Virus record (IMG/VR): IMGVR_UViG_3300024239_000011
Coordinates: 248,001 to 312,000 of that record
Strand: one strand, 5' to 3'
Length of the DNA: 64,000 nucleotides
The notes beneath the pieces are model-generated. The model saw nothing but the letters and a program-made list of their open reading frames with translations, ran no database searches and was not told where the DNA came from. Every line of letters begins with the position of its first letter. The first letter of the stretch is position 1. Of this stretch, positions 47,601 through 61,073 are shown one piece after another. Both the position numbers and the translations under genes were made by a program.

Positions 47601-50600
47601 AACCGTCCAGCGTCAATGTCTTCCACGATAGTTGAAGCACTGGTGTGTGCGGACAACACCGAGTAATACCGGTTGTCGAATTTAACCTCTTCATATTTTG
47701 AATAGAAGGTATTCGGTGCCCATGACTGAACTTCAAGTGGAATATTGACTACATCATCGTTCGGCAGATCAGCAATGGTACTGTTGTTGGCGAAAAACTC
47801 AACCAACTGCGGACGTGACCGTACTTCTCGTTGACGCAACAAGAATTCAAAGGTCAATTTATTGGTAACGCCACCATAGTTTCCGACGCGGAATGCCCAT
47901 TCATCAAAGAATTTAACTTCTTCCGCGTCCAGCACAAAGAAACTACGCAAGAGTTTTTGCATAGCATCAGAGGTGCCTTTCTGACGCATGGCACCCTGGA
48001 AGAACTGGAACTCGGTCTTAGGATCAAGCAACAGATCATTCATATAAGCGCGACCCTGGTAGCCCACTAAGTGCAGCGAGTAATTACGCAGGGTTGGATT
48101 ATCTACCCCATCTTCAATACCAAAGAAATGACGGAAGTCATCCACGGTCTTTTCGAAGTTTGGGATCAAAACATTGTCGGTCACAATAAAACCGGGGGCA
48201 TCCATGCGCCCAACCCAATCCATTGACCGCGTTGCCGACAGACGGAGACGTGGCTGACGCAGGTTGAATACCGGATCATAGATCAGATCATTGAAAATTG
48301 TCACGTTGTCGAAAATGATAACGTGTTCAACTTCACTGACAAACAAACGGGTCAGATAAATCAATTGGTCGTTACGTGACGTGACCACCAATTCATTACC
48401 GACGCGCGAGACATCGGTTTCGCGCGGTTGTATCATAAAGCCATCGCGATTAAGCATCGAATATGCACCACGCACAATGCGTTCGATATTCTGTACTTCG
48501 CCATGGTCGGTGACGAATTTGACATATTTTGATGCCGGTGACAGTGCAATAGTATTACCCGGTGCCCAACGTCCGAGAGACCAGAACAAAAAGTCCTTGC
48601 CAACCGAGACCCAATCAATCGTCTCTTCGTTGGCAAAATCCATTTGTTCGAAAACCCATCCGTCTTTCTTCAGCCAGCGTCCATAATCCACAAGGAAGTC
48701 AAAAACATCTTGTGGATTGTAAAATTCAGTACCATACGGTACATTAAGAATGTTTCCGGCACGGTTTGCATCAAGATAATGAATTACCGTGATGCCTTTA
48801 TTATTCGGACCAAGATCAAGTGGTTTCCAGAAGGAATCCCCAAACTCTTCACCGGAACGATGGTTGTCAATGCACTTGTATTCAACTCCCTGATTAACAA
48901 CGATATCCCCTGCCGTGTACACAACATGAGCTTGCCATGGACGACCAGTTTTTTCGGTCTTACCAACGGCAACCTTGGTCTTGCGACCATTGATATCACT
49001 TGGAATGGTGCGGAATACTGGATCAACCACATCGTAACCAAACACCTTCCATCCTCGACCGGTCCACTGCACGATTACGCCGCTATAGGTGTGATCGGCA
49101 ATGCTCGGGCTGCGATATAGGAAGACGTTGATGTTTTCGCTCGGGACCAAACCGAAGTTATCGGCACGAGCCTGTAAGGTGTTCTGATCCACAAACCCCG
49201 CCATTTTGTGACCAAGACGCACGTCAATACCACGAATGACCTTACCGAACGCCTCGGTAATATCCTGACCACGGCTTTTGATGTAATCACAAACCCATTG
49301 TTGTACCCCGGTCACGCGATAACGCTGCGGAAGATCAACCTCAGAGGATTCTTCGCCATGCAAGGTCAAATAGCTGTGCGGACGACGGGCACGAATATCA
49401 TCGTACACCCACTGACGGGTTTGCTTCTGGTTGCGATAAATTTCCTTCAGGCGGACGGTATCCCAACAGTATTCGATCAGTCGCACCGGCTTGATCAAAT
49501 ATCCGCTCATGGTAGCAGCGAACGGGAAGTTCGGGCTGCGGCGCCATGCGGTTTCTGTCGGTCCATGATCCCCGAATTTCCATTCCTGCTGTGCTTCAAA
49601 CGCAGTCGGAAGGCGCGAACAAATACCAGCAGATACCGGATCAATCAAATTACCAAGATCATCTACCGGAATGTACTGCGACATTCCGGGACGCTGGTAC
49701 TCTGAATAGGTACCAGCGGTCGGTCCACGAGCGATAATGCCGTTTTCAAGATCGCCCCACAACTTGGTATTGCCGCGCGTATATGGAGCCACGCCGTAAT
49801 GGGCATCCCACCAATCCGGCTTTTGTGACATACCAAGCATTTCCCATGGGTGTGTATGGGGGCGGTCGGTATCAAAATAGTACAAATAGATGCCACGCCA
49901 ATGCCCTGGCAACGGCTGCCCGTCACGATCAGGAACCGCTCCGTAATTCCATGTGAATGGATTGTCGGCAATCCACGTCTGGTTTTCACGATAATTGACG
50001 CGAGACATCGTTGCCCACCGTTCAAAGGCAGGACGGATAATGCTGTTCCATTCAGCCCATGAATAATCGGTCAAATAGCCTGCACCACCCTCACTCGCGG
50101 GGCGCCGGAATTTACCAGATACGTACCGACGATGGTCGAAAATCCGTTCAGCCCCTCGTTGGGCAAAACGCAGCGACGAATTGTTGTAAACGCGCTTCTC
50201 AAATTCGAGTACAACGCTGTTCAGGAACTCATATTCCCCGGTGAAGCTTTCGATATACGAACCATCATGTGCCTGAATAAACTGACGTGGGTTCAGCAGC
50301 GTCTCATCCACTACCATCCCAGGACGGAAAATAGCATAGATGCCCATTTGAGAGGGCGACGGTGGCACGTAGGTGAAATACCCATCATACCGGATCAGAC
50401 GAATTTTATCGGTTTCATTGAGGCTGAAATCGCCAAGCAGACGTATTTCGTCTACGTCAGTCTCGTAGTCCCACCCACGATCCAATAATTTCGGAAATTC
50501 GCCGTTCTTTTCCAAATAGACGAATGATTTTTCGATGTTCTCGCGGGTGCCTGGAATCAGATATTCGTTGACACCGGTAAAGCAGTCCACCGAAACTTCG

Positions 50601-53600
50601 AAAACCTTGAAGTTATCACCCGCCGGGCACATTGTGGAGTATGCAAAGGGGAAATCAACAGTCTTACCAACATTGATTTCTTCCAATGCCCGATTGACGA
50701 AATCTTCAGGGGAAATCAGTCGATCAATACCCTGCTCATAGATATCCACAATCTTACGGATAAATTTGTTACGGAAACGGCTGAACTCATGTTCCGCATA
50801 CTGTATCGACAACATGAAGTCAATGTTTTGATCTGATGCCATAATCATAGTCTTCAACATCGGCGCTCGATGTTGAAGAATTACGCGACCAAACGAACGA
50901 TCCTTTGGGGTGTCACGGTAGTTGTTTACCCCGTACACGTTCCCGTTAAAATTCTTCTGACTCTTCAATATCGTCGTGAAGTGATCAAAGAATTCATTAT
51001 AACTGATTTCACTTACTTCACGAGAATCCGGGTTGCCCTGAAGATTGAACGGAACCTCATAGACGCCAACCAGATTATCTGGCGCTCGCCGCACATAGGT
51101 GTAAATGGTCACAAGGTTATTCTTCGCAACACCGTTACGCAAACTGACAACACCATCAGATACCGAATAATCAGTGTACAAATTGAGTTCTTCGGCATTA
51201 ACCATTACAGAAATGGCATCCGGATCGATCAATTCATCAACGGTTAAGTTGTGCGAAATTGCGAAATCAGTTTGACCTTCGGTAGAGATGTAGGTGTGTT
51301 TGATGCGCTGACGGCTTGGCATATCCACCAAGTACCAGTCGTTTGAATAATCAAAACTGCCATCAATTTTCTGGGTACGATGGAAGTAATACCCCGTAAT
51401 CTCATCCTTATCCAGGGCATAATTGAACCGTTCGGTGGTTAAGTAATTCTTGTAAATGGGATGACCACTTGCGCTGTGTTTGACGCGCATTTCAAGAATT
51501 GTGTCCATTGGAACGCCCGCCGATGCTTCATCGGTGAATCCAAAAACGCGGCTACCGGCGAACGTGGATTCTGGGTAACGCCCCGGATCATCCAAGGCAA
51601 CGCCGTCGATGTCGTAGAGTGCAAATAATGGGGGCTGGTTCGAGTGGGTCTTGCGCTGAACTTCAATCCAGTTGTCGCCATCGAAGCGGAAATCACGGTC
51701 AAGGTTTGAGAACCCGTATCGAGAACGAATGGTGTCGCCAACCGAAGGAAGACCACTTTCATTCTCGCCAACAATGACCGGCGATAGTACCACACGTCCA
51801 GTGGATTTGATACCAGATACACGGTAAATGCGATTGTTGTATTCTGGGTTTGGATCATTGGTGATCAAGATGGTCATACCATCGCGGATCAAAATGCCCT
51901 TCTCGGTATCCCAGATAATCGCGGTGATCTTGGTTTGTGCAGTCCCGGTAGGTTTACGAATGCTTAGTGTGTTATTGGCGTTGATACGATAATCGAAACC
52001 AATACGCACTGGACGATCATTGAAATAGAATACCGCACGCAACGCTTCGTCCGGAGTTAACCCAAGACCCATCGTCGGATTGGATAGATCAATGGTGTAC
52101 GATCCCGCATCGACAAACCAAGTCGAAGTCGGATCATTGGCAGTATCTACCCAGTTTTTACCACGTGCTGATACATCAAGCAGCAAGGGTGCAATACCAA
52201 ACTCACGTAACGGGGGCTGATTGTGAATAAAATCAGGATTGGAAGCAGCGAACCCATTGATCTGAGTGAACGTTAATACGTCTTCCTTAACATCCACATC
52301 ACCAACACGACGTTGACCATACTGATACAATTCCAAATTACGCTTGAACTCAATGATTGGACGCTCAGCGCGAATCGCGTCGTCCGTACCACGGTCGGCA
52401 CGAGCAACGACATCCTCGTGGAACCACCGGTTCCCGCGACTCCATGGATTGCCGTCAATACAACCACGCTCCATCACAAGATAATCTGGACGGGCACTGG
52501 TTGTCGCCAAAGCAACACTACCCCAACCAAGACCCTGCTCGGCATCCCACCCAAATGGTTCAATGCGCAGATTGATTTCTTTTCCAACCCCGGCAACTTT
52601 ATACATACAGGTCTTGTAGGTATACTTGGTGACTTGTTCGAAACCATATGTAACAAAGATGATCAGCATGTTGTTGGTCAGCGCAATCGGCTCGGACGGC
52701 GACGCATACGATGCTTCCCATTTGTCGTCATAGGGGTCAGTCACATCCGGTGGGGTCATCGGATCAAATGGACGCCACGGGTTGTCCTGATTTGCTCGCT
52801 TGTAATGACCACTAAAATCAAAATATTTCTTACCGTTAATGGTCGTGATGAAGTTTTGAATATCAGTATTCGGGTCTTCAATGAAAAATACGTAGGGTGT
52901 GACCGTATAACGACCAAGATCATCCCAGCGATGACCACCTTCACCCTCTGGTTCTTCAATCAGGAATGCAGATACACCAACTCCTTCAATAATGAAAGTC
53001 TTGTTGTTGAACTGATCGCTATTCACGTCGCGGCGAATAGTCAAACGCATTCCACTGGTGAGGGTTAGCGGTTCTACCGTTCCGTCGTGCGGCTCAGTGA
53101 TGCTGTCATCAGACGGCAGCCGATATTTTCCCGTGAATATTAATGGATAATCCGTATTCCCGACCAAAGTTCGTTCCACATCAGTCAAACTGAGAATTTC
53201 AATCGGTTTCGGTCCACGCGGCATCCAATAATACCGTTTGAAATTCATAAGCTTATCGATGTCTACCGGCGGACACCATGAATAAAACTCATTGTCGAAA
53301 AGACGGTTATGGTCGTTTATCAAACCGCCATGAAAACGCAGATGGTTCAATAGATCATCGTAGAACAAAGCATGCGTCACCGAAGCAGTTTCCGTGGCGC
53401 GGCTGATTGCTATGGGTTCCATCGAATAATCTTGGCGTGTCTTTGATGGCTCCTGAATGTAGAAATCCTTTTCAGGGTCAGTATACAATGGATAGCGTCC
53501 AATGTATCCACTGACTACTTCCGATGCCTGTGGCTGGAATAGATGATCTACAGTGGCGCCAAAAAACCGCTGAAGGGTCTGGCTTTGAAGAACCGAAGGC

Positions 53601-53632
53601 AAATGCTTGATTACTTGTCTTTTCTCGACCAT
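38666..53632 (-). CDS. Giant (4988 aa) baseplate/virion structural protein
   Basis: Uninterrupted 15 kb ORF; YINEVKPYHSKIR; YFDTDRPH..PWEM; four W/Y-x4-Y-x2-(G/N)D CBM5/12-like repeats; RVLVKNQ...ENGIY fibre motif; TAAATA at 53664-53669. Confidence 0.85.
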   Translation of the reverse strand: MVEKRQVIKHLPSVLQSQTLQRFFGATVDHLFQPQASEVVSGYIGRYPLYTDPEKDFYIQEPSKTRQDYSMEPIAISRATETASVTHALFYDDLLNHLRFHGGLINDHNRLFDNEFYSWCPPVDIDKLMNFKRYYWMPRGPKPIEILSLTDVERTLVGNTDYPLIFTGKYRLPSDDSITEPHDGTVEPLTLTSGMRLTIRRDVNSDQFNNKTFIIEGVGVSAFLIEEPEGEGGHRWDDLGRYTVTPYVFFIEDPNTDIQNFITTINGKKYFDFSGHYKRANQDNPWRPFDPMTPPDVTDPYDDKWEASYASPSEPIALTNNMLIIFVTYGFEQVTKYTYKTCMYKVAGVGKEINLRIEPFGWDAEQGLGWGSVALATTSARPDYLVMERGCIDGNPWSRGNRWFHEDVVARADRGTDDAIRAERPIIEFKRNLELYQYGQRRVGDVDVKEDVLTFTQINGFAASNPDFIHNQPPLREFGIAPLLLDVSARGKNWVDTANDPTSTWFVDAGSYTIDLSNPTMGLGLTPDEALRAVFYFNDRPVRIGFDYRINANNTLSIRKPTGTAQTKITAIIWDTEKGILIRDGMTILITNDPNPEYNNRIYRVSGIKSTGRVVLSPVIVGENESGLPSVGDTIRSRYGFSNLDRDFRFDGDNWIEVQRKTHSNQPPLFALYDIDGVALDDPGRYPESTFAGSRVFGFTDEASAGVPMDTILEMRVKHSASGHPIYKNYLTTERFNYALDKDEITGYYFHRTQKIDGSFDYSNDWYLVDMPSRQRIKHTYISTEGQTDFAISHNLTVDELIDPDAISVMVNAEELNLYTDYSVSDGVVSLRNGVAKNNLVTIYTYVRRAPDNLVGVYEVPFNLQGNPDSREVSEISYNEFFDHFTTILKSQKNFNGNVYGVNNYRDTPKDRSFGRVILQHRAPMLKTMIMASDQNIDFMLSIQYAEHEFSRFRNKFIRKIVDIYEQGIDRLISPEDFVNRALEEINVGKTVDFPFAYSTMCPAGDNFKVFEVSVDCFTGVNEYLIPGTRENIEKSFVYLEKNGEFPKLLDRGWDYETDVDEIRLLGDFSLNETDKIRLIRYDGYFTYVPPSPSQMGIYAIFRPGMVVDETLLNPRQFIQAHDGSYIESFTGEYEFLNSVVLEFEKRVYNNSSLRFAQRGAERIFDHRRYVSGKFRRPASEGGAGYLTDYSWAEWNSIIRPAFERWATMSRVNYRENQTWIADNPFTWNYGAVPDRDGQPLPGHWRGIYLYYFDTDRPHTHPWEMLGMSQKPDWWDAHYGVAPYTRGNTKLWGDLENGIIARGPTAGTYSEYQRPGMSQYIPVDDLGNLIDPVSAGICSRLPTAFEAQQEWKFGDHGPTETAWRRSPNFPFAATMSGYLIKPVRLIEYCWDTVRLKEIYRNQKQTRQWVYDDIRARRPHSYLTLHGEESSEVDLPQRYRVTGVQQWVCDYIKSRGQDITEAFGKVIRGIDVRLGHKMAGFVDQNTLQARADNFGLVPSENINVFLYRSPSIADHTYSGVIVQWTGRGWKVFGYDVVDPVFRTIPSDINGRKTKVAVGKTEKTGRPWQAHVVYTAGDIVVNQGVEYKCIDNHRSGEEFGDSFWKPLDLGPNNKGITVIHYLDANRAGNILNVPYGTEFYNPQDVFDFLVDYGRWLKKDGWVFEQMDFANEETIDWVSVGKDFLFWSLGRWAPGNTIALSPASKYVKFVTDHGEVQNIERIVRGAYSMLNRDGFMIQPRETDVSRVGNELVVTSRNDQLIYLTRLFVSEVEHVIIFDNVTIFNDLIYDPVFNLRQPRLRLSATRSMDWVGRMDAPGFIVTDNVLIPNFEKTVDDFRHFFGIEDGVDNPTLRNYSLHLVGYQGRAYMNDLLLDPKTEFQFFQGAMRQKGTSDAMQKLLRSFFVLDAEEVKFFDEWAFRVGNYGGVTNKLTFEFLLRQREVRSRPQLVEFFANNSTIADLPNDDVVNIPLEVQSWAPNTFYSKYEEVKFDNRYYSVLSAHTSASTIVEDIDAGRLVETENRWVVKPNREMETIFPLRAINETREGDLPVAGYARVDESDHYALDLTDLSSVHYEILQKGKNFVTGEKIWVYDINDEWQMFSVQNLGTAVVNVTKVEYVSDTETKITVSDTHNLAIDDLIVITTDTKSIPDVRGIHYVKSVPSTTEFIIPVVIDDMFDWTSQGGTTGPAVMKFFPRRFATISARNATLNTGQWLSGDLAYVDDAGNGKYAVYQYNGNNFDTIPVRIQPAKVDNNRIFNAVIYDKKTTEVQQYVHLYDPAKGIIPGTADAEIWYKLEIDPAVYNNGDPKYHRMNPEIAWGGGEEHRLWWDLSTVKFLDYEISDNKYRKYVWGRLAPRATIDVYEWTRSTVPPTEWARQVEINKGKAIEAFDAKPTGSVKDANNPAWCERTEYDPATGDYKTVYYFWVKNKATVPPVEWRKLTTTQVAKFIENPSTFDMPWFAPISPDATIISGVDYLLNDENSIVQVNYRRTDREDNVHREWVLMREGDDRSYPDPLLWRKMTDSLVGFNVEYMDVPDLSLSTVERYGNLFRPRQSWFNDRYMARRIIVERVNTMLTKRPVMQGDLTYLQSSDEGLLTFTEKSPRALVAQKHVGSSIGLLAKIDVDLATATIDGNVDLTGGTFPGTIDRVFVREGNRVLVKNQIDATENGIYVYHENDKVFVRATDCAAGSHLPEGANIYVRRGNDNRGTKWIQCVSNAVVGVDNNNWFEVVGDLDYHMEVDSFDERNAKEIDPDFVLERGTRVLVRGNTSTYGFWSLWSYDPTVAGRWSCDAVQHYKTIDFWSTVDWYDTGYSKLNIPRYVFPSEVERDIHDREVGFSAGDLIRIDKKDIDLWYWQEYQGKVDGEAFGRWKMVAYKNGTIKLSDRFYDESRRQIIKDNHPTDLNAYWETVRLRDGSLEFKAMLKALMGDADIPGLLSKGEINALFFAMVHYAHTEHRMVDWAFKTSFLFIKGINEPLIQEPVLRKDKTDSIIGYINEVKPYHSKIRDFTLSKILPMETGHARVTDFDKPVFPLDRTIKDHAVIDVVWNGDGTYTIADPYTATDFRNSRHHKDWYENFQKIADDHYPVRSMKTTIHFDRVKWIDWYVDGEQALLKLYREHYGQREESTTKRAHRLGDRVWFHNYDGLNQDHWKVVYLRSPNHPIPTRIASLKPGASNRVIVKTPANHNVVAPHYDMNPSAYDANISYVVGDIIRWRTKNYLCIKSYVSTGDFDGEKLKHWSDAIPQIAAYVVIPQPIPEVVLTGDGHTKLFELPFRVDEHDLEVYVDGRLLDWATTANYYTDGDALEISRDNDAKTYTPDYEIVSMEQREDIVIRGTSTGTIALKNIPYHESTISVKVKRNLRGVKAWAAEKVYVVNDLAKHSGSVFVCTTSHTSVDFATDQSNWELITPDAIIPRNGTPRVTNADPLYTFMYGNGQIVMISPTPKSGDQLMITYKTDPGVRLRINETPKDGQTIYIRRRSQTTMVGAYKVMKYVDANTIEIKASLPSDIIFGSDNIPMNLLTYRDDVLTLVNEKGDNITVPYDNTMDPNLLTQAERIMLYYRPTPGMPAKDMRELLDINFKGTRMDGGDLLDTKFSEDVGNHVPVMNFVYNGQDEVPVTYWQDGMDNSLGWGDHIFDSIRDKMDGDVVVVEYNGIVQLSDAYDFYYNTTEDLWKVRFNALPNHGDLITVAVVTNDIVDGVETTMSEKKSTRYYDMNIMGGTFTAPASTSGFDDVIVDGGFFLAGPSKTFEALDGQQDFQLDGAPVVGVIGSADDLNWHARVYVNGRRRLDGYHLENIAGTWHVIFDESVVQGTEVRIELQGKPAMTNPYMDENRPQELIATRTADSLGITVYTEATAGAPSVVSARYEADDVTTHFELRQKPSSRETVFVTVGLDGENMMLEMVSRNPMTGDPLFSSDTAVRADQYYLHWDTGVVELGIAPPKGAVIKITSFSTGGTNVENIDTFVSVGVGEFTLTKLPAATPNIRVWTQAGTQPVTEITEFNVIEQQLFLGVAPTEGTLVTVTYEIEDAASNDFQNNQNQRIVEIARFSPTNGIMPPLMLKNPEGITYSQSHISVVRDGEVLSLGDYSVIKHDTGTHEVVLTDGEPGEVAIVAFNTPNIVKVRTHQYQYTAGEPIILTDVPSPTVPHHGAVLVYKKITEADLICENGQPAGTSIGDPLVADDVGRGIRLMPPTTRYFLGDGGCFAYRFERPITSVADTQIWIGQNTTPLVPVYPAGTVGGDATGTVDVGSFTIPQRFRGPIDANDALPCDGDDDLKAGDYFVIEGYFGFDDGGYDGVPFDNTPKPEGTNVRNWLGVAFAGTWATKGMNRPNPNQTNQNEFGFEDGDMILYLGRGRWSRMITSAGMRNTGNYAASLARAVEEATREIHFFDAPSKNADICFVWYEHGKYDYDIKNGNELHLYGPTFAGLTLEDGDWITVTTFSDDEAMGIRTEVFTATVNGKYPLTRVPSDANSLWVNTNGRRNIYGMDYTIQNSTIGWDNLSWDAYFGWDDNRSRPLVSFNNRHSGDWRVVVTTFTNRSAQQPVGFRLFKNSQDEWEYLRIADAHKTKLNTALDFDDRHMQVVDAKVFVTNNEAAILSRKDVTMYATTATLVVNIDLLSSTPVPPVHVVVSDNAAGGAADGIITHADIAMAINSNADLRAVTISAAITEHGHLIIRRVDGQDFSISDSASDALATAFFGNNVVSSVRPLLTPEAVFVDGERIEYMGIDVVNNRLLNIRRGTGGTSSGIRNIYRNHMEVSDGLKEEFILPGWFDPMNDDAVMIKAEYVDHGKVMVKEYRKESYTVTRNDTDEVVVKFPYAPTEGWVLTFSATVSNWEISGASYPAGTIVVDGGAPQYIPGGYRWEGLLDKGFQGQLDAIPVGTKGVTQADAGRWYQLSRAYDAELLDIRVIIEHEGFVDPETGETRTIEEQLIRYQDWFIDGTILKFRRNIPAPTNGQNNIILHLRSYRGLQYSNSAMAQFLREKPATHYWGN

Positions 53633-53744
53633 ATCGACCTTGACTGTTTAATTAATGCATAGGTATTTACGCCGGTATTATCACCGCAGTTATTTATCCC
53701 GACCGAAAATAAAGCCGGGAACAAATAAAGTTTTCTGGACAGTC

Positions 53745-53773
53745 TTGACAGCATCAATCTAGCGTTGTATGGT
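53745..53773 (+). promoter_or_regulatory. Sigma70-type early promoter
   Basis: TTGACA-17 nt-TATGGT. Confidence 0.6.
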
Positions 53774-53800
53774 ATTCACAACACAGCGGGAGTTATCTCG

Positions 53801-53977
53801 ATGTCCTCGAATACTAAGAAGCGTCATCCGGTCGAATACCTCGGTCATGTTGCCGGGTATGCCACCACCAAGCGCGGCGCTCTGCGCATCATGCGCAAGC
53901 TGAACAGCCTCGTGACCAAGATGGCTTTGAGCAAGGGCAAGAAGCCCGTCTGGCAGGCGGTCGAATGGGAGGGCTAA
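53801..53977 (+). CDS. Small basic hypothetical protein
   Basis: GGAG RBS downstream of the promoter. Confidence 0.65.
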   Translation: MSSNTKKRHPVEYLGHVAGYATTKRGALRIMRKLNSLVTKMALSKGKKPVWQAVEWEG

Positions 53978-53980
53978 GAC

Positions 53981-54463
53981 ATGTCCAGAACTGTTCGTAA
54001 GGTTCCCAATTGGGTGTCCAATCGCCACTGCAACAAGCATTTGGATAAGCCGTGTGCGGTTAGCTCTCATGGCTCCCCGCGCAAGTTCGATACCGACCGC
54101 GACATGTTCATCTTCGAATATACGCATGGGCTGTCGAAGCCGATGAACCTGTTCGCGGGTGACGGGGTTTTGGTTGGTCGCAAGGGCGCCAAGGCGGTCA
54201 AGAAGGCGTATTCCAAGAAGGCGCGTCGTCAGAGCATGGCGGTTCTCGAAGCCGAATTGCTGATGGCGATGGAACCCATCGATCCGATCTTCGACCCCGA
54301 GGATGATTACTTCCCGTCGTATGACGACGATCTGGACCTCGATCCGTTCGATGAGCATTATGCGGCGAACGACGATTGGGATTACGTCGATGACGGGATG
54401 GATTTCTGCGATCCCTGGTACGACGATTACCACTCCCACTATTACCCCATGGCTGCGGAGTAA
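53981..54463 (+). CDS. Hypothetical protein, basic N-terminus and Asp/aromatic-rich tail
   Basis: GGAGG RBS; composition. Confidence 0.75.
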   Translation: MSRTVRKVPNWVSNRHCNKHLDKPCAVSSHGSPRKFDTDRDMFIFEYTHGLSKPMNLFAGDGVLVGRKGAKAVKKAYSKKARRQSMAVLEAELLMAMEPIDPIFDPEDDYFPSYDDDLDLDPFDEHYAANDDWDYVDDGMDFCDPWYDDYHSHYYPMAAE

Positions 54464-54468
54464 CCACC

Positions 54469-54648
54469 ATGTACATGATCACCGGCTACGACGACCTGTG
54501 CATGGACATCAACATCAAGGTTGAGTCCTTCATGGAAGCCATCCAGATCATCCGCAAGCTGCGTGATACGTGTATCGTGTGGCTCACTCGCGAGAGTAAG
54601 ACCCCTGGGAAGTATGTCCCCACCAAGTATTCCACCGCGTGGGTCTAA
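54469..54648 (+). CDS. Small hypothetical protein (59 aa, MYMITGYDD...)
   Basis: GGAG RBS; ends at the terminator. Confidence 0.6.
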   Translation: MYMITGYDDLCMDINIKVESFMEAIQIIRKLRDTCIVWLTRESKTPGKYVPTKYSTAWV

Positions 54649-54650
54649 GG

Positions 54651-54683
54651 GAAAGGCGGGAGAAATCCCGCCTTTTCTTTTTC
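54651..54683 (+). terminator. Intrinsic terminator
   Basis: AAAGGCGGGA-GAAA-TCCCGCCTTT followed by a T-tract. Confidence 0.8.
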
Positions 54684-54746
54684 TATCACTTGACTTTTAG
54701 TACGGTGAATGTCAAAAATCCATAAGCGTTCACCGGAGTTTTCGCC

Positions 54747-55358
54747 ATGCCCTACGACCCCAGTGCTTTCATTCACTTCGCGATGCAGAACGGCGTGTTT
54801 CCTGAAGGCGGGAAGTACGGTGATCGTATTACCTTCACCATCCATGCGCCCAATAATCTAATGTTGGTGTTGGACGCCGGGCGGAATACCGGGGTACTGC
54901 CGCCCTCGTTGGAGTTCGACAAGCGCAACGGTAAGATCACCAAGGTCTGCAATGGGTTCGACAAGTACCCCGAAATGCTAAAGTGGATAATCACCTGCTA
55001 CGTGTCCCAGCGCGTCACCCGTATGACTGGTTTGAAGGTAATCAAGATGACCCAACTGGTCGATTACGACGCTGCCACCCAGGAATTCGACAAGATGGGT
55101 CGCGGCGTCCGCTCTGGCATTCGTGACTGGTTCACGCGCCTGGGGCAGGACATGCTTGCGGTACCAGTGATGGAGGCGCTTGCCCTCACCGAACGTGCGA
55201 TGATACTGCTGTCGAAGTTGACGGAAGAACAGGCGGATGTTCTGTATGAGGAAACGGAAACCGTGCGTCGCAAGTCGCAATTGGGTTTAATCGAATATAT
55301 GTCGGAGCAAGAGATTCTGGTTGAATTGCTCGACCAGATTGAGAAGGAAGTTCAGTGA
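54747..55358 (+). CDS. Hypothetical protein abutting the repeat array
   Basis: GGAG RBS; stop codon 6 nt before the first repeat; no Cas motif recognised. Confidence 0.75.
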   Translation: MPYDPSAFIHFAMQNGVFPEGGKYGDRITFTIHAPNNLMLVLDAGRNTGVLPPSLEFDKRNGKITKVCNGFDKYPEMLKWIITCYVSQRVTRMTGLKVIKMTQLVDYDAATQEFDKMGRGVRSGIRDWFTRLGQDMLAVPVMEALALTERAMILLSKLTEEQADVLYEETETVRRKSQLGLIEYMSEQEILVELLDQIEKEVQ

Positions 55359-55364
55359 TCATTT

Positions 55365-56284
55365 CTGTCGCACCACGATCCGTGGTAATTTCTTAGGTAC
55401 GGTTTGTCCACCATGGTACTATCGCACCACGACTGCCGTGGTATTTCTTCGCTTTTACGGCTGGGTCCATGGCCACGCCCGTCTTTCGGACCACGAGCAG
55501 ATTGCCGTGATATTTGCTTCAAAGAAAGCACAAGGAATGGCGCTCTGCGAAACACTTTCGCACCACGATTGCCGTGGTATTACCAACATTCACGGTAATG
55601 GTTCTGAATCTGCGGCTTTCGCACCACGAGCAACCGTGGTATTGCCTTCCAACGACAGGAGGAATGCATGCGCAGTCTTTCACTTTCGCACCACGAGCAG
55701 ATTGCCGTGGTATGTTTCCCTGATCGGGACGACATCTACGCCCTGTTCAGACTTTCGCACCACGAGCAGATTGCCGTTGGTATTGCTTCGCGCGACCTGA
55801 TCAATTTCCTCGAAGAGATTCGCCTTTCGCACCACGGGTGAATTGTCGTGGTATTTGCTTCCGATGAAATGGAACATGCCGCCAAAACCGACGTACTTTC
55901 GCACCACGGGCAAGTTGCCATGGTATTGCTTCACCAGCAAAAACAGACCGCATGTCGCGATGGTCAGCTTTCGCACCACGGGCAAATTGCCGTGATATTG
56001 CTTCCAGCTTGGTCACCACCAGCGTGTCGCCCTCGCGCTTTCGCACCACGGGCGAATTGCCGTGGTATTGCTTCTCTGACTATCGCCAAGCAGCAGGTCG
56101 ATCTCTATCGCACCACGGGTGAATTGCCGTGGTATTGCTTCCCCCGGCAACTACCTTGCCTTCGTCCATGTTGATCCTTCGCACCACGGGCGAATTGCCG
56201 TGGTATTGCTTCCCATAGCTGCTGGATTTGACAGCATGATGTTCGAGCTTTCGCACCACGGGCGAATTGCCGTGGTATTGCTTC
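55365..56284 (-). CRISPR. CRISPR-like array, 14 repeats and 13 unique spacers (about 26-35 nt)
   Basis: Plus-strand consensus CTTTCGCACCACGGGCGAATTGCCGTGGTATTGCTTC (37 nt); starts at 55365, 55419, 55483, 55555, 55616, 55683, 55752, 55824, 55896, 55968, 56038, 56105, 56176, 56248; hairpin ACCACGG/CCGTGGT; decay increases leftward; minus strand ends in GAAAG (orientation inferred). Confidence 0.9.
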
Positions 56285-56344
56285 ACCGCGCGCCCTGAGT
56301 ACACGTAGCCGTCATGTAACGGGCTGTCATGTGCAGTTATCGAT

Positions 56345-56488
56345 GCATACCACGGTTCTCGTGGTGCGAACGACACCCTGTTCAAGGGCGTCGATTTGTA
56401 TTTGGTAATACACCACGCCAATCGTGGTGCGACAGCTACCTACAATCGTTGCCAACAGTCCTATAACAATACCACGACAATCGTGGTC
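56345..56488 (+). CRISPR. Three inverted degenerate repeats with two spacer-sized gaps
   Basis: ATACCACGGTTCTCGTGGTGCGAAC, ACACCACGCCAATCGTGGTGCGACAG and AATACCACGACAATCGTGGTC are reverse complements of the short-loop variants in the main array. Confidence 0.75.
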
Positions 56489-56563
56489 TTTTTATTTGCC
56501 ATACTATACAGACAGGTGTATGCATGTATGCATGAATGATTAACCGAATCATGAGGTGCAAAT

Positions 56564-56974
56564 ATGTCCTACCCTACTCGCGAAGAAATCCAAGCTGCCG
56601 CTCTGCCGCTGATGAAGGCTCAACAGCTTCGTCTTGGCTTCTATGTAACTGACGATATTGTGGCAGAACTGGCGAAGGAATTCGGCGTCGATCTCAACGA
56701 GAAGATCGAAACCGGTCGCAGCAAGTTCGGCAACCTGTTCGACTGGGTGACTGCTCGGATGACTTCCACCGGGCAGCACGTCAAGATCAAGCCGAAGCAT
56801 TATCGGCTGGTGCTTTTCCCGTCTGTGACCGATCAGCGGGATGCCAAGGTGGACCACAAGACGGCTCCATCCAAGAATGATTTGTTGCTCAAACTGGCAC
56901 AGCAAATCGACACAATGGCGCAGAACATGGCGCAGATCAACGAAACATTCCGCCAGCTTCAAAAGGCGGCGTAA
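56564..56974 (+). CDS. Stand-alone Mrr N-terminal-like winged-helix protein with coiled-coil tail
   Basis: PT.EE....LPLM...IVAELAKEFG...TGRSKF.N..DW....M...G resembles Mrr_N; no nuclease domain. Confidence 0.6.
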   Translation: MSYPTREEIQAAALPLMKAQQLRLGFYVTDDIVAELAKEFGVDLNEKIETGRSKFGNLFDWVTARMTSTGQHVKIKPKHYRLVLFPSVTDQRDAKVDHKTAPSKNDLLLKLAQQIDTMAQNMAQINETFRQLQKAA

Positions 56975-56977
56975 ACG

Positions 56978-57009
56978 AAGAAACCCCGCCACTGGCGGGG
57001 TTTCTTTTT
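56978..57009. terminator. Bidirectional terminator
   Basis: AAGAAACCCCGCC-ACT-GGCGGGGTTTCTT followed by T. Confidence 0.8.
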
Positions 57010-57017
57010 CGAGTTAT

Positions 57018-57251
57018 TCACCAACACTCTTCGCATCGCAATTCGAATACCGTGTCTTGATCACAGTTTTCGGGGATCGTCACTTTCAATTTCGCTCGAT
57101 CTATGTGAAGGATGCGTAGGGTGATTTTCACCGTGACATCAGGAAAGATCACAATGTCGTCAACCAAAGGGACGACAGGCATTGTTTTGGTGAATGATCT
57201 GCTCGACATACCATGGCGAAATGTCATATCGAATAAGACGAGGTATTTCAT
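57018..57251 (-). CDS. Hypothetical protein
   Basis: ATGA overlap with the upstream ORF. Confidence 0.55.
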   Translation of the reverse strand: MKYLVLFDMTFRHGMSSRSFTKTMPVVPLVDDIVIFPDVTVKITLRILHIDRAKLKVTIPENCDQDTVFELRCEECW

Positions 57252-57925
57252 TCCGCTTCGTCCCATTCTTTATCAAACGGACGGATGAATTCCCACCGGT
57301 CATTACACCAACGGATATGTTCACATGGCACTTCACTGTATGGGGTTTTACGCCCATCAATCCAGTCGATCTGCACTCTCTTGGTGTCCGTGTCGATAAT
57401 GACCACTGTACCTTCGCGGTCAGCGTCCTGCCACACCGAATCGCCTTCGAATAGGGTGTGTTCGGTTTGTTCCAAACGACGTTCAAGGGTTGCCATGATC
57501 TCTTCGGCTGACATGGCATACCGTGTGACAACGGTATCCGGTCCCAACAGCCCAAGTGCCCGTGATACCAGCCCATCGATGAAACCAAGTTTCACCCCAT
57601 CACTGGCTTCTTCACCCGCCAGTGTGGACATGAGGCGTGCTGCCATGATTGCTTCGAGGTAGATGTCCAGCTTGGCGACCCGGTGATTGTCGAAACCACC
57701 CGCATAAGCATGTAAGGCACGCGCCAATTCGGCATGTCCGATCCCAGCTTCGTCCGACATGGCATTGAGTGCGATGAGCAGCCCGCGCCCGATATCAGTC
57801 ATCACGTCGTCGGGAACATTTTCACCGCCATGGATACCACGCACCATCAGCACGGAGTTGACCAGATCGACTACTTGCTGGGCAATGACCATTGACAACC
57901 GATCACCAATCACATCTTCAGCCAT
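57248..57925 (-). CDS. Hypothetical protein
   Basis: GAGG RBS before MAEDVIG. Confidence 0.65.
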   Translation of the reverse strand: MAEDVIGDRLSMVIAQQVVDLVNSVLMVRGIHGGENVPDDVMTDIGRGLLIALNAMSDEAGIGHAELARALHAYAGGFDNHRVAKLDIYLEAIMAARLMSTLAGEEASDGVKLGFIDGLVSRALGLLGPDTVVTRYAMSAEEIMATLERRLEQTEHTLFEGDSVWQDADREGTVVIIDTDTKRVQIDWIDGRKTPYSEVPCEHIRWCNDRWEFIRPFDKEWDEAE

Positions 57926-58052
57926 TTTGCCCTCAGTCCCTTTGAAAAGGATAGGATAACGATACTCGGTATGCGTGTCAAGCCGGTGAATTAAAGCCAG
58001 AGATAAATATTGGTTAAATACCACAGACGGTATTTCAGGGGATGGTATTACC

Positions 58053-58637
58053 ATGAATAAGAAGCAAACAATTGCAAAATGCGAAGTTGATGATTTCTTT
58101 GATAAGGGCGGTGCTACCGCCATGGGTCACATCTTCATTCATGACCCGGAAACCGGTGAAGTATTTGTGAATAAACGTAATGCGATTCACTACGAATCAT
58201 TTTCTATAGCCATCATCAAGGCATTGGCCCAAAAACAAGACGGGCACATTTACACGATGGCATTTGGTAATGGAGCCTCGGCGGTATCTGGTATTGGAAC
58301 GATCACTTACTTGACCCCAAATGTGGTTGGGTATGGAGCAGAATTGTATAACCAGACTTACGCTAAGAACATTCTCGAAGACAACATGGAAGTTCGTCAT
58401 ACCCCTGGTGAACTTTATACCGATCTTGTTATTCGAGTAACATTGGGGTTTGGTGAACCCTCAGGACAACGTGCTTTTGATGACGCGATTAGTCTTGAAG
58501 ACGCTTATGTTTTTGATGAAATTGCGTTGAAAGCATTTGACGGCACTTTACTTACACATGTGATTTTTCACCCTGTGCAAAAAAGTTTGAATAGACAAAT
58601 CGAATTAGTTTATACCATCCGCGTCGCGATGGTTTGA
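58053..58637 (+). CDS. Baseplate/tail structural protein
   Basis: NAIHYE, MAFGNG, FDEIALK, LLTHVIFHPVQKSLNRQIE..YT; TAAATA at 58004 and 58015. Confidence 0.75.
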   Translation: MNKKQTIAKCEVDDFFDKGGATAMGHIFIHDPETGEVFVNKRNAIHYESFSIAIIKALAQKQDGHIYTMAFGNGASAVSGIGTITYLTPNVVGYGAELYNQTYAKNILEDNMEVRHTPGELYTDLVIRVTLGFGEPSGQRAFDDAISLEDAYVFDEIALKAFDGTLLTHVIFHPVQKSLNRQIELVYTIRVAMV

Positions 58638-58649
58638 TGTGCGGATACT

Positions 58650-58682
58650 AATGAAAAACGGCGGGAACCCGCCGTTTTTCAT
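58650..58682. terminator. Bidirectional terminator
   Basis: ATGAAAAACGGCGG-GAAC-CCGCCGTTTTTCAT between convergent genes. Confidence 0.8.
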
Positions 58683-58723
58683 TACGTACTCATGCTATTC
58701 CTCGAATTTCTTGTTCCGTGGGA

Positions 58724-59740
58724 TTAATACACCAATTCGTCTTGTTCGTGACCTTCGTAAATGATAATCTGCCCGGATACCGCCAGTTCCTTAGCAATAA
58801 CGACGATGAGCGACTGCGCCTGATCCACGTCGCGTAGGCGTACTGGTCCCATTGCGTCCATGTCTTCCTTAAGCATTTTTGCCGCACGTTCGGACATGTT
58901 CTTCATGAACAAGTCTTTGATGCCATCAGAGGCACCCTTGAGCGCCAGGGACAGTCGGTCTTTTTCCACCTGACGCAGTAATGTTTGGATACCAGCGGCA
59001 TCCAAGCGCACCAAATCCTCGAAGGTGAACATCAGCGCCTTGATCTTTTCCGCCGATTCGCGGTTGCGTTCTTCGAGCGAGGACATCAAGCGGTTTTCGG
59101 TGGTGCGGTCGAGGTTGTTGAAAATATCTGCCATCAATTCGTGGGTATCGCGGCGTTGGGTGCGGGCGAGGTTGCCCATAAATTCGGTACGCAAGATATC
59201 TTCAACCTGATCCAACACTTCCTTCTGTACCGCCTCCATACGCAGCATGCGCATCACCACTTCCATGGCGAAATTTTCCGGCAGTAGTGCCAGCACGCGG
59301 GCGGCGTGGTCGGGCTTGATCTTGGCCAGCACGACGGCGACGGTCTGCGGGTATTCGTTCTTCAGGTAATTGGCCAGCACCGCTTCGTTGACGTTGCCCA
59401 GCTTGTCCCACATGGTACGACCAGCGGGACCGCGAATCTCTTCCATGATTCGGCTGGCTTGATCGCTGGGTAATGCCTTAGTGAGAAGTCGTTCCGTGCT
59501 TTCGATGGAACCGACTAGCGTACCAGTGGTCAAAAGGTTGTCTGCAAATTCTGCATACAGAGTTTCGATCAATTCAGGCGTAACGGTGCCTAGGTTCGCC
59601 ATGATCTGCGACACTTCCTTGATTTCGTCATCATCAAGGCGGTGCAGAATTTGCGACCCGTGATCTTCCCCGAGTGCCATGAGGAAGATGGCGGCTTTTT
59701 GTGGACCCGTCAGGCAACGATAGTCGGTCTTTATCGGCAT
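58724..59740 (-). CDS. fliG: Flagellar motor switch protein FliG, alphaproteobacterial type
   Basis: [54 protein letters not shown]; full length; TAAATA at 59769-59774. Confidence 0.97.
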
Positions 59741-59818
59741 TTTTCACCTGTTTGCATCAACGATGCCTTATTTAACCGGACAAAGGTGAAGAAATATCCG
59801 AGGAAAGTCAATAAGAGA

Positions 59819-60082
59819 TCAGCCCAAAATGGCGACTGGAAGCACTCCATGGTATTGCGGATACCGATGCCCCAGCACCGTTTTGGGAATGAATACGGTG
59901 GACACTTCACCGCGATGAGCCGCGATGATCATATTCACCTGAAAGAACTGGTTGGGGTGTGACGTCATCCAGGCAGTTTCCGCTTTCTTATGCGCATCCA
60001 GGGCAGATTCCGCCGTCACGGTGATTGCATTCACTGGGTCGCCGTTGCCGTATGGGGGTGTAATAACGGTGAACTTGGTCAT
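59819..60082 (-). CDS. Hypothetical protein
   Basis: GAGGG RBS; lies between ate and fliG. Confidence 0.6.
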   Translation of the reverse strand: MTKFTVITPPYGNGDPVNAITVTAESALDAHKKAETAWMTSHPNQFFQVNMIIAAHRGEVSTVFIPKTVLGHRYPQYHGVLPVAILG

Positions 60083-60084
60083 GA

Positions 60085-60807
60085 TCAGTCACCCTCGTTT
60101 TCCAATGGTTGCCACCCGTTCGAGCCGCAGACTTCGAGCGGTTTGAAGCGGGTTTTATATTTCATGGTTTGTGCCCCTTTTACCCAAAATCCCAGATAGA
60201 AATACGGAAGGTTTTGGCGTTTGAGTTCTTCAATTACCCAGAGGATCGCAAAAGTACCTAGCGACCGTTTATCCATGGACGGCTCGAAGAACTGGTAGTT
60301 TCCAGAAAACCCGTCATTCAATCGGTCGATCAGGGTCACTCCGATAAGATGCCCATTGGCATCCCGGAATTCGTATAGGAACGTTTCAATCGGGCTGATC
60401 TCAACCATCGACCGATAGTCCTCAAAACTCATCAACGCCATGTCACCGCCAGTGTGTCGCGTTTCCTGATAGCGTGTGAACAATCCGTATTGTTCCTTGG
60501 TCGCAACATTCTTCACGCGAGTAACAATCAAATCGGTATTTGTCTTGATAATTTTGCGCATGGTGCGGTCAGGAGCAAACCCATCAACAACAATACGCAC
60601 AGATTTACACTCCGAGCAGCCCGTGCAGGTTGGAGTATAGATGATGTTATGACTGCGCCGATAGTTTGACGCTGCCATATCACTATAAAATTTCTCGGCA
60701 TTTTTCAGGCTGGAAATTTCAGTCACGGTTTTACGTTCAGCCCGTGCCGGAAGATATGGGCACGGCAGCGGTGACGTTGTGAAGTAATATGGAGATTTTC
60801 TCGTCAT
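60085..60807 (-). CDS. ate: Bacterial ATE/Bpt family aminoacyl-tRNA--protein transferase
   Basis: PCPYLP..ERK, YRRS...Y.P.C..C..C.SVRI, Y...RH..G.M, SLGTF.IL, YLGFWV, M.YK.RF.P.E. Confidence 0.93.
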   Translation of the reverse strand: MTRKSPYYFTTSPLPCPYLPARAERKTVTEISSLKNAEKFYSDMAASNYRRSHNIIYTPTCTGCSECKSVRIVVDGFAPDRTMRKIIKTNTDLIVTRVKNVATKEQYGLFTRYQETRHTGGDMALMSFEDYRSMVEISPIETFLYEFRDANGHLIGVTLIDRLNDGFSGNYQFFEPSMDKRSLGTFAILWVIEELKRQNLPYFYLGFWVKGAQTMKYKTRFKPLEVCGSNGWQPLENEGD

Positions 60808-60881
60808 TGAACACCTGTGATACACCACCCGCCATGTTAGCGTTCTGGTTGTGCATTGTCAATGATCGCCTAAATACGATC

Positions 60882-61073
60882 ATGAGGTATTACCATATTA
60901 CAATTCGCTACGGTGGAACTAAAAAAACGCCTTTTTGGGATGAACCAAGAACGTTTTCGGTATGTGCAGATCGCGAAGATTTGGCACTCGAAGAACTTTT
61001 GCGCCGGTACCCAAGGTATCTTGGATTTGAGGTCGAACATATTGAAGAAAGCCTCATCTCAGAAAACGCATAA
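60882..61073 (+). CDS. Small late hypothetical protein
   Basis: TAAATA (60871-60876) 5 nt before the ATG. Confidence 0.55.
   Translation: MRYYHITIRYGGTKKTPFWDEPRTFSVCADREDLALEELLRRYPRYLGFEVEHIEESLISENA

What the first reader, a model, noticed from the sequence alone, without database searches (positions are those of the whole stretch)
56005..56037. Spacer 10 encodes a serine resolvase/invertase signature
Seen: the reverse complement CGCGAGGGCGACACGCTGGTGGTGACCAAGCTG translates to REGDTLVVTKL. Known: small serine recombinases (Tn3 resolvase, Hin/Pin family) carry GDTLVV.KLDRL just before catalytic-site arginines. Inference: the spacer came from a high-GC plasmid, transposon or prophage recombinase. 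This supports real acquisition and suggests the phage targets co-resident mobile elements through a conserved motif.
Basis: partly seen in the sequence, partly recalled or inferred. Interest (0 to 1): 0.7.

Follow-up and report, generated by a model that had tools for sequence, protein, structure and literature searches.

The report
Phage CRISPR spacer matching a recombinase gene
One spacer in a CRISPR array carried by a 543-kb phage is an exact copy of 33 bases of a DNA-invertase/resolvase gene from a mobile element of an alphaproteobacterium, and the array is a type IV-A-style array that has no cas genes of its own, although a sister phage has the full cas operon at the same spot.

Summary
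Window 56005-56037 is a 33-nt spacer whose reverse complement reads REGDTLVVTKL. It has a 33/33 match in a 185-aa Resolvase+HTH_7 gene (Gin/gamma-delta family) in a mobile-element-like region of Methylobacterium aerolatum. It has 31/33 matches in orthologues of M. cerastii, Pelagibius marinus and Methylobacterium plasmid pAMS5c. About 1.6e-8 exact matches are expected by chance.

The window is part of a 543,035-bp Atu_ph07-like jumbo phage, probably with an alphaproteobacterial host.

The array has 14 repeats and 13 spacers. Three inverted degenerate repeats follow it. No cas gene was found anywhere in the phage. A sister phage is 97-98.5% identical in both flanks. It replaces exactly this 1.1-kb cassette with an 8.5-kb type IV-A CRISPR-Cas locus (DinG, Csf2, Csf3, Cas6e-like) flanked by two outward-facing arrays. 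Those repeats are homologous to the window's repeats but have a different stem.

So the spacer is a real acquisition from a recombinase gene of a mobile element. Whether this cas-less array still interferes with anything is unproven. The idea of broad targeting through a conserved motif is not supported: near-exact DNA matches are few. This is a new member of known kinds, of moderate interest.

The parts
56005..56037 (-). Spacer 10 (4th spacer from the cas-proximal centre). On the - strand it reads as the sense strand of a serine recombinase gene (REGDTLVVTKL).
   Evidence: 33/33 match to M. aerolatum recombinase. 31/33 matches in M. cerastii, Pelagibius marinus and pAMS5c.
55365..56284 (-). 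Array A: 14 repeats and 13 spacers of 24-35 nt. The consensus repeat on the - strand is GAAGCAATACCACGGCAATTCGCCCGTGGTGCGAAAG. Repeats are best conserved at the right (centre-proximal) end. At the left end they are decayed and have shortened loops.
   Evidence: Hairpin fold with 7-nt 5' and 6-nt 3' tails. Homology to type IV-A repeats of two other phage contigs.
56285..56341 (.). 57-nt centre between the two outward-facing arrays. In related phages the type IV-A cas operon sits at this position.
   Evidence: Architecture compared with L078 and L075.
56342..56490 (+). Array B: three degenerate, short-loop repeat units in the opposite orientation, spaced 63 and 59 nt apart. The last is followed by a T-run. 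It occupies the position of the sister phage's mini-array next to the 136-aa gene.
55359..56495 (.). The whole variable cassette (array A, centre and array B). A sister phage replaces it with 8.5 kb that carries a type IV-A CRISPR-Cas locus.
   Evidence: Loose ends at 55356 and 56496 in runs X2-X4. Contig NODE_195 aligns to window 50042-55359 and 56496-63608 at 97-98.5% identity. Cas identities by PADLOC.
56564..56974 (+). 136-aa protein P0002, directly beside array B. Homologues sit beside the type IV-A arrays in the sister phage (99% identity) and in contig L078 (43% identity). The N-terminal 86 residues resemble the Mrr_N winged-helix fold. It may be a partner or regulator of the locus.
   Evidence: No Pfam or PADLOC hit.
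54747..55358 (+). 203-aa protein P0001, the left flank of the cassette. Its stop codon abuts the left junction. No known domain.

Best explanation
The window belongs to a 543-kb Atu_ph07-like jumbo phage, probably infecting an alphaproteobacterium.

Positions 55359-56495 hold a pair of outward-facing CRISPR arrays of a rare, phage-borne type IV-A lineage. The cas operon that sits between such arrays in relatives is missing here.

Spacer 10 was acquired from a ~185-aa serine recombinase gene (Gin invertase / resolvase family) carried by a plasmid or integrated element of a high-GC alphaproteobacterium. The source is the Methylobacterium recombinase family or a close relative.

The following steps are inferred. 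Array A is transcribed on the - strand. A Cas6e-like nuclease would cut after the hairpin. This would give a crRNA with a ~7-nt 5' handle, the 33-nt guide (identical to the recombinase sense strand, so it pairs with the template DNA strand) and a 3' hairpin. In a Csf complex with DinG, such a crRNA would bind the recombinase gene and silence or destabilise the element without cutting it, as shown for plasmid type IV-A systems.

This phage encodes none of these proteins. Its array therefore either works only with a cognate type IV-A complex supplied in trans (by a co-infecting relative or a host plasmid) or is a decaying remnant.

My estimates: origin of the spacer 0.95; type IV-A family assignment 0.8; present-day interference activity about 0.35.
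For: - **Exact protospacer.** The match is 33/33, and 35/35 if two repeat bases are counted, in M. aerolatum.
- **Target gene identity.** Pfam Resolvase 4.6e-40 plus HTH_7; phrog_125 DNA invertase 6.4e-58; full-length match to Gin (PDB 4m6f, 1e-29) and gamma-delta resolvase.
- **Target context.** Neighbours are a ParB-like protein, an endolysin-like hydrolase and a tyrosine integrase. The 31/33 match in pAMS5c lies on a 20-kb plasmid next to a tape-measure gene.
- **One gene family.** The best-matching genes are 66-79% identical in protein.
- **Same study.** Recombinase-coding contigs that align only to the spacer occur in samples of the same study as the phage.
- **Sister phage.** It carries Csf4/DinG (2.7e-41), Csf2 (3.1e-13), Csf3 (4.7e-25) and a Cas6e-like protein (1.2e-12) exactly in place of the cassette.
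- **Second phage contig.** L078 has the same operon between two outward-facing arrays.
- **Repeat homology.** Repeats of the three loci share ATAC before the stem and an invariant GGT.CG...G after it. Their stems differ but still pair, and they fold alike.
- **Orientation.** Repeat decay runs away from the centre.
- **No adaptation genes.** No Cas1 or Cas2 was found, as is usual for type IV-A.
- **Host.** The nearest phages are Agrobacterium Atu_ph07 and Sinorhizobium Phosso. The phage FliG is 67.6% identical to Azospirillum/Hyphomicrobiales FliG.
- **Type IV-A biology.** Taken from review PMC11656645.
Against: - No cas gene of any kind was found in the 543-kb genome.
- The sister's repeats have a different stem (CCCCC/GGGGG against CCACGG/CCGTGG), so its Cas6 may not process this array.
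- No locus joining this exact repeat to cas genes was found in 185,579 genomes, IMG/VR or JGI metagenomes.
- The 5' flank of the exact protospacer is TGC, not the AAG PAM known for studied IV-A systems.
- Transcription is not shown. One RNA-library contig at depth 2 covers part of the array, but it may be DNA.
- A + strand terminator-like hairpin with a T-run at 56471-56496 would also fit + strand transcription.
- The motif is highly conserved and high-GC codon choice is narrow. The exact match therefore identifies the gene family firmly but the source organism only loosely: 29-30/32 matches also occur on actinobacterial plasmids.
- The oldest repeats are decayed.
Confidence: 0.78

Rival explanations
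1. The array is a functionless relic. A type IV-A locus lost its cas operon by deletion, and the two arrays are drifting. Spacer 10 records a past acquisition, possibly made before the locus entered this phage, and does nothing today.
For: - No cas genes in the genome.
- Only 57 nt separate the two arrays, at the place where relatives carry about 5.5 kb of cas genes.
- The distal repeats carry indels and substitutions.
- There is no spacer variation between samples.
Against: - The five centre-proximal repeats are nearly identical, and the hairpin is kept in all 14 units.
- The identical array persists in subsurface, soil and wastewater samples from four studies.
- Distal decay is also seen in arrays of L078, which does have cas genes.
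Confidence: 0.4
2. The array is serviced by a host-encoded CRISPR-Cas system (type I or another type) whose repeats it mimics, like the cas-less arrays and mini-arrays described in other viruses.
For: Huge phages with cas-less arrays that resemble host repeats are documented (Al-Shayeb 2020; review PMC11656645). The hairpin-plus-handle layout also fits Cas6e- or Cas6f-processed type I repeats.
Against: - No similar repeat was found in one genome of each of 185,579 species.
- None was found in about 800 sampled Beijerinckiaceae and Rhizobiales genomes searched with the whole array.
- The closest repeats found are those of phage-borne type IV-A loci at the homologous site.
Confidence: 0.1
3. The repeats act as RNA decoys (an RNA anti-CRISPR). 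They soak up the Cas6/Csf proteins of competing type IV-A-bearing phages or plasmids, and the spacers are irrelevant.
For: Repeat-derived RNA anti-CRISPRs in viruses are known (review PMC11656645). A sister phage with a related type IV-A system co-occurs in the same samples.
Against: A decoy needs only solitary repeats. Here 13 spacers of regular CRISPR length are kept, and one has an exact foreign protospacer. The stems differ from the sister's repeats.
Confidence: 0.07
4. The similarity to recombinases is coincidental and the element is not a CRISPR array. It would then be, for example, a series of terminator-like or regulatory hairpins.
For: The repeats score as terminator-like hairpins in a simple scan. 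No cas genes lie nearby.
Against: - A 33/33 match has an expectation of 1.6e-8.
- The repeat-spacer period is a regular 67-72 nt.
- The repeats are homologous to those of arrays flanking bona fide Csf/DinG genes at the same locus.
Confidence: 0.02

Closest known systems
Plasmid-borne type IV-A CRISPR-Cas (IV-A1 of Pseudomonas oleovorans, IV-A3 of Klebsiella plasmids; Pinilla-Redondo 2020, Guo 2022 and Benz 2024 as cited in PMC11656645)
   Same: - The sister locus has DinG, Csf2, Csf3 and a Cas6e-like protein, and no Cas1/2 or nuclease.
- Repeats have the hairpin-plus-handle layout.
- Spacers are about 30-35 nt.
- The one identified target is a gene of another mobile element, which fits conflict between mobile elements.
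   Different: - It is carried by lytic-type jumbo phages, not plasmids.
- Csf2 has only two relatives at E<1e-10 among 1.84 billion representative proteins and no hit in 50,697 phage records.
- DinG is only 23-30% identical to plasmid DinGs.
- Repeats are 35-37 nt, and two outward-facing arrays flank the operon.
- In the window itself the cas operon is absent.
- The protospacer flank is not AAG.
Cas-less or adaptation-less CRISPR arrays of huge phages (Al-Shayeb et al. 2020, PMC7162821)
   Same: It is a huge phage carrying a compact array without Cas1/2/4 and without interference genes. A spacer matches DNA of bacteria or mobile elements found in the same study.
   Different: That paper's main text does not mention type IV or DinG. 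Here no host repeat match was found. The cognate type can instead be inferred from an allelic cas-bearing locus in a sister phage.
Virus-borne mini-CRISPR arrays used in inter-virus conflicts (Saccharolobus portogloboviruses; reviewed in PMC11656645)
   Same: It is a virus-carried array without cas genes that would depend on Cas proteins made by something else.
   Different: Mini-arrays have 1-2 spacers, repeats identical to the host's, and spacers against related viruses. Here there are 13+2 spacers, no host repeat match, no cross-targeting of the related phages, and a recombinase gene of a plasmid or integrated element as target.
Gin/Hin/Cin DNA invertases and Tn3/gamma-delta resolvases (the target gene family)
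   Same: The target protein matches Pfam Resolvase plus HTH_7 and aligns end to end with Gin and gamma-delta resolvase. The spacer covers the GDTLVV-KL strand just before the DRLxR catalytic arginines.
   Different: The target belongs to a distinct alphaproteobacterial subfamily whose members are 66-79% identical to each other. Whether it acts as an invertase or a resolvase in its element is unknown.

Membership tests
CRISPR array (generic) | Three or more direct repeats of 23-55 nt, separated by unique spacers of similar length | tested here: met
   14 repeats of about 37 nt and 13 unique spacers of 24-35 nt, with a period of 67-72 nt in the intact part.
CRISPR array (generic) | At least one spacer identical to foreign DNA (a protospacer) | tested here: met
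   Spacer 10 matches 33/33 in the M. aerolatum recombinase gene. The other 12 spacers have no match.
CRISPR array (generic) | cas genes adjacent or elsewhere in the genome | tested here: not met
   No hit in flanking ORFs. 88 ORFs of at least 380 aa gave only two distant TnpB-like genes. Cas1, Cas2, Cas6, RAMP, DevR and Csy4 Pfam models gave 0 hits. ORFs under 380 aa outside the window were tested only with those six models.
Type IV-A CRISPR-Cas | csf2 (Cas7), csf3 (Cas5), cas6/csf5 and dinG (csf4) next to the array | tested here: not met
   They are absent from this genome (tblastn with the sister's proteins). They are present at the homologous site of the sister phage and in L078.
Type IV-A CRISPR-Cas | Repeat homologous to the repeats of loci with type IV-A cas genes | tested here: met
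   Alignment A2 shows an invariant GGT.CG...G 3' part and ATAC 5' of the stem. The stems differ but still pair, and the fold topology is the same.
Type IV-A CRISPR-Cas | Same locus architecture and position as cas-bearing relatives | tested here: met
   The cassette's borders (55356-59 and 56496) are the borders of the sister's type IV-A insert. Two outward-facing arrays occur as in L078 and the sister. The P0002 homologue lies beside the arrays in all three.
Type IV-A CRISPR-Cas | crRNA processing and DinG-dependent interference or repression | not testable with these tools
   No stranded RNA data exist. One depth-2 contig in an RNA library may be DNA.
Small serine recombinase (target of the spacer) | Resolvase catalytic domain with N-terminal Ser motif plus C-terminal HTH | tested here: met
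   PF00239 at 4.6e-40 and PF02796. Full-length alignment to Gin 4m6f and gamma-delta resolvase 1gdt, with YARTSTLDQ aligned on Gin's YVRVSTNDQ and KLDRLARS on KLDRLGRS.
Host-dependent viral cas-less arrays / mini-arrays | Repeats identical or near-identical to a host CRISPR array | tested here: not met
   0 hits for the repeat pattern in 185,579 species genomes. No repeat hits in about 800 sampled alphaproteobacterial genomes. The pattern was fairly strict, so diverged host repeats could be missed.

The most novel reading that the evidence does not exclude
The array-only phage is a 'CRISPR freeloader'. It keeps guides but no proteins, and loads its crRNAs into type IV-A complexes made by co-infecting sister phages or host plasmids. 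Alternatively, it uses the crRNAs to jam those complexes. The same hotspot would then alternate between a full system and a guide-only allele within one phage population.
Probability: 0.2. Interest if true: 0.75.

Novelty: new member of a known kind. Interest (0 to 1): 0.5.

Why it matters
- **Real spacers, and a host clue.** The result gives a clean case of a huge-phage CRISPR spacer with an exact protospacer. This shows that a cas-less array holds real acquired spacers. Together with the nearest phage relatives and the phage's FliG gene, it points to an alphaproteobacterial host.
- **A rare lineage and a natural comparison.** Following the spacer uncovered a rare, divergent type IV-A lineage living in jumbo phages. 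It also uncovered a natural pair of near-identical phages that differ by having either the full system or only the arrays at one hotspot. That pair is a ready-made comparison for two questions: whether phage arrays without cas genes work in trans, and how CRISPR loci are gained and lost in phage genomes.
- **Fit with known type IV biology.** Targeting a recombinase gene of a plasmid or prophage agrees with the view that type IV systems serve conflicts between mobile elements.

Tried and rejected
- **Spacer in IMG/VR.** The exact spacer gave 0 hits.
- **Repeat searches.**
  - IMG/VR gave 0 hits with the strict pattern and only single chance hits with the relaxed one.
  - 185,579 genomes gave 0 hits.
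  - JGI metagenomes returned only the phage's own record plus single-copy chance hits.
- **Other 12 spacers.** Nothing significant was found against plasmids, phages or about 800 Beijerinckiaceae/Rhizobiales genomes.
- **Second recombinase spacer.** I suspected spacer 7 (peptide RDLINFLEEIR) also came from a recombinase. A degenerate pattern found nothing in 401 Rhizobiales genomes, so I dropped the idea.
- **TnpB/Cas12f-like genes as effector.** The two 391-aa genes lie more than 100 kb away. Their flanks show no similarity to the repeat, and they look like IS-type copies.
- **Self-origin or self-targeting.** The phage has no Resolvase-family gene and no second copy of the spacer.
- **Cross-targeting.** No spacer of this phage, the sister or L078 matches the others' available DNA. 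L078's spacers have no plasmid hits.
- **PAM.** It cannot be derived from one protospacer. The flanks of the near matches differ.
- **Other searches that gave nothing.**
  - Rfam and tRNA scans of the window.
  - Relatives of P0001 or Csf2 in IMG/VR.
  - A paper search for the metagenome id.
- **Third Csf2 relative.** P0007 lies on a 1.7-kb contig without an array.

Full report
**1. Observation**

Window 56005-56037 reads CAGCTTGGTCACCACCAGCGTGTCGCCCTCGCG. Its reverse complement translates to REGDTLVVTKL. It lies between two copies of a 37-nt palindromic repeat. The array spans 55365-56284 and has 14 repeats and 13 unique spacers of 24-35 nt. The repeats are nearly identical at the right end. 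Towards the left they lose loop bases and pick up substitutions. Three further repeat-like hairpins lie in the opposite orientation at 56342-56490, and the last is followed by a T-run. The genome holds no other such array.

**2. Where the window comes from**

- The window is bases 248001-312000 of a 543,035-bp virus record with GC 0.487. It is the metagenome contig Ga0247724_1000001, from a subsurface sample.
- The surrounding genes are structural genes of a T4-like jumbo myovirus: a baseplate wedge, a baseplate hub/lysozyme, and a 4,988-aa protein with CBM_5_12 modules.
- The baseplate wedge protein is closest (42-43% identity) to Agrobacterium phage Atu_ph07 and Sinorhizobium phage Phosso.
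- A phage-borne FliG is 67.6% identical to FliG of Azospirillum and of a Hyphomicrobiales bacterium.
- Both lines point to an alphaproteobacterial host.

**3. Source of the spacer**

BLAST against 72,556 plasmids placed the best hits in 'recombinase family protein' genes. The top hit was 31/33 on Methylobacterium sp. AMS5 plasmid pAMS5c.

A scan of one genome for each of 185,579 species, with two wobble positions left open, found three loci:

- 33/33 in Methylobacterium aerolatum DSM 19013;
- 31/33 in M. cerastii;
- 31/33 in Pelagibius marinus.

About 1.6e-8 exact matches are expected by chance. In the 31/33 matches every mismatch is a synonymous third-codon base.

The M. aerolatum gene has these properties:

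- It encodes 185 aa with Pfam Resolvase (4.6e-40) plus HTH_7, and matches phrog_125 'DNA invertase' (6.4e-58).
- It aligns end to end with Mu Gin (PDB 4m6f, 1e-29) and with gamma-delta and Tn3 resolvases. The spacer lies on Gin's QKGDTLVVWKL, just before DRLGRS.
- Its neighbours are a ParB-like protein, an endolysin-like hydrolase and a tyrosine integrase, so the region looks like a mobile element.
- The four best-matching genes form one family, 66-79% identical in protein.

Short contigs from other organisms that align only to the spacer, and continue as recombinase coding sequence, occur in samples of the phage's own study and in wastewater runs. The phage has no Resolvase gene and no second copy of the spacer. 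Spacer 10 has GC 0.70, against 0.53 +/- 0.05 for the other spacers.

One caveat applies. The motif is very conserved and high-GC codon use is narrow, and matches of 29-30/32 also occur on actinobacterial plasmids. The gene family is therefore certain, but the donor organism is only indicated.

**4. What kind of array it is**

No cas gene was found in the phage.

- Flanking ORFs have no Pfam or PADLOC hits.
- The 88 ORFs of at least 380 aa gave only two TnpB/Cas12f-like paralogues. They lie more than 100 kb away and show no link to the repeat.
- The Cas1, Cas2, Cas6, RAMP, DevR and Csy4 models found nothing.

Laying public runs on the region showed a second strain that departs from the window exactly at 55356 and rejoins at 56496. 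Through a 99%-identical homologue of the 136-aa gene downstream of the array, I reached that strain's contig, ENA ERZ4201046 NODE_195. It is 97-98.5% identical to window 50042-55359 and 56496-63608. In place of the 1.1-kb cassette it carries 8.5 kb with these genes:

- Csf4/DinG (PADLOC 2.7e-41);
- Csf2/Cas7 (3.1e-13);
- a Cas6e-like protein (1.2e-12);
- Csf3/Cas5 (4.7e-25);
- two small unassigned proteins.

That is a type IV-A system. It has an 8-repeat array after dinG and a degenerate 5-unit array after the last gene on the other side.

A second related jumbo-phage contig, L078 (251.7 kb), has the same operon, with Csf2 51% identical. It is flanked by two outward-facing arrays of about 18 and 15 repeats.

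Read on its - strand, the window repeat shares with those repeats an ATAC before the stem, a 7-8 bp hairpin whose sequence differs while staying paired, and an invariant GGT.CG...G tail. All of them fold to the same topology.

The window cassette is therefore the same architecture with the operon missing. Array A faces left, a 57-nt centre follows, and array B faces right. This sets the likely transcription of array A on the - strand and fits the repeat decay running away from the centre.

The lineage is rare.

- Csf2 has two relatives at E<1e-10 among 1.84 billion representative proteins.
- It has none in 50,697 phage records.
- DinG is only 23-30% identical to plasmid DinGs.

**5. Mechanism**

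*Shown:* the spacer derives from a recombinase gene, the repeat family and the locus are type IV-A-like, and the phage lacks cas genes.

*Inferred:*

- A Cas6e-like enzyme would cut after the hairpin.
- The crRNA would carry a ~7-nt handle, a guide identical to the recombinase sense strand, and the 3' hairpin.
- A Csf-DinG complex would bind the gene and repress or destabilise the element without cleavage, as established for plasmid type IV-A systems (review PMC11656645).

Because the proteins are not encoded here, the array either depends on a complex supplied in trans or is a remnant. The stems differ from the sister's repeats, so cross-use is uncertain.

The array is identical wherever it was covered in four subsurface or soil runs. 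Fragments of it were also found in four wastewater runs. This shows persistence but no ongoing acquisition.

**6. Comparison with what is known, and verdict**

Huge phages with arrays lacking adaptation or interference genes, and with spacers against bacterial DNA from the same site, are known (Al-Shayeb 2020). Type IV systems are known mainly from plasmids and from some prophages, and they target other mobile elements. This case is a new member of both kinds. Its added interest is the full-system and array-only alleles at one hotspot.

The claim of active, motif-based broad targeting is not supported:

- near-exact DNA matches are few;
- the other spacers have no hits;
- no effector is encoded;
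- no PAM can be derived.

Noticed in passing
window 58724-59740 (-): The phage encodes a full-length flagellar motor switch protein FliG (N, M and C domains). It is 67.6% identical to FliG of Azospirillum and of a Hyphomicrobiales bacterium. This is an unusual auxiliary gene for a phage.
   Followed up: partly
window 60085-60828 (-): A homologue of arginine-tRNA-protein transferase (ATE_N + ATE_C, N-end-rule type) lies next to FliG. It is conserved in the sister phage.
   Followed up: no
window 38666-53632 (-): A giant 4,988-aa ORF whose only Pfam hit is CBM_5_12 carbohydrate-binding modules. It is probably a giant fibre or adhesin of the virion.
   Followed up: partly
window 56564-56974 (+); L078 14527-14916: The 136-aa protein P0002 sits beside type IV-A arrays in three phages (99% and 43% identity). 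Its N-terminal 86 residues resemble the Mrr_N winged-helix fold (TM about 0.52). It is a candidate accessory protein or regulator of this CRISPR lineage.
   Followed up: partly
G000 61214-62389 (+) and 191873-193048 (-), outside the window: Two 391-aa TnpB/Cas12f-like paralogues, 85% identical in protein. Similarity is confined to the gene plus about 70-95 nt on each side, so they look like IS-type or homing copies inside a jumbo phage.
   Followed up: partly
L075 7180-13765 (sister phage contig ENA ERZ4201046 NODE_195); L078 6375-14440: A divergent, phage-borne type IV-A CRISPR-Cas lineage with two outward-facing arrays. Csf2 has only two relatives at E<1e-10 in 1.84 billion representative proteins. 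The sister's insert also carries a 290-aa Peptidase_M50/pentapeptide protein and a 199-aa unknown protein.
   Followed up: yes
window 55061-55359 versus L075: In the sister phage the P0001 gene is disrupted by an indel of about 100 nt. Only an 87-aa C-terminal ORF is called there.
   Followed up: no
window 54700-57000 in runs X5-X8: Fragments identical to the array and its left flank occur at low depth in wastewater metagenomes and RNA libraries from three other studies. This phage, or a near-identical one, is therefore not confined to the subsurface site.
   Followed up: partly
window 8841-10580 (-); G000 174246-175874 and 204017-205822: A family of homing/HNH endonuclease genes (phrog_3339) is present in several diverged copies across the genome.
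   Followed up: no
G000, among ORFs of at least 380 aa (exact positions not determined): Four large ORFs match PADLOC viperin (pVip, radical-SAM) models at 1e-14 to 1e-15. Single ORFs match candidate defence families (PDC-M16A, PDC-M42C, PDC-M37B, DolB, a RecD of type IV-D).
   Followed up: no
window 1515-2468 (-) and 34488-35432 (+): Two DNA methyltransferase genes (phrog_56; N6_N4_Mtase). They probably protect the phage against restriction.
   Followed up: no
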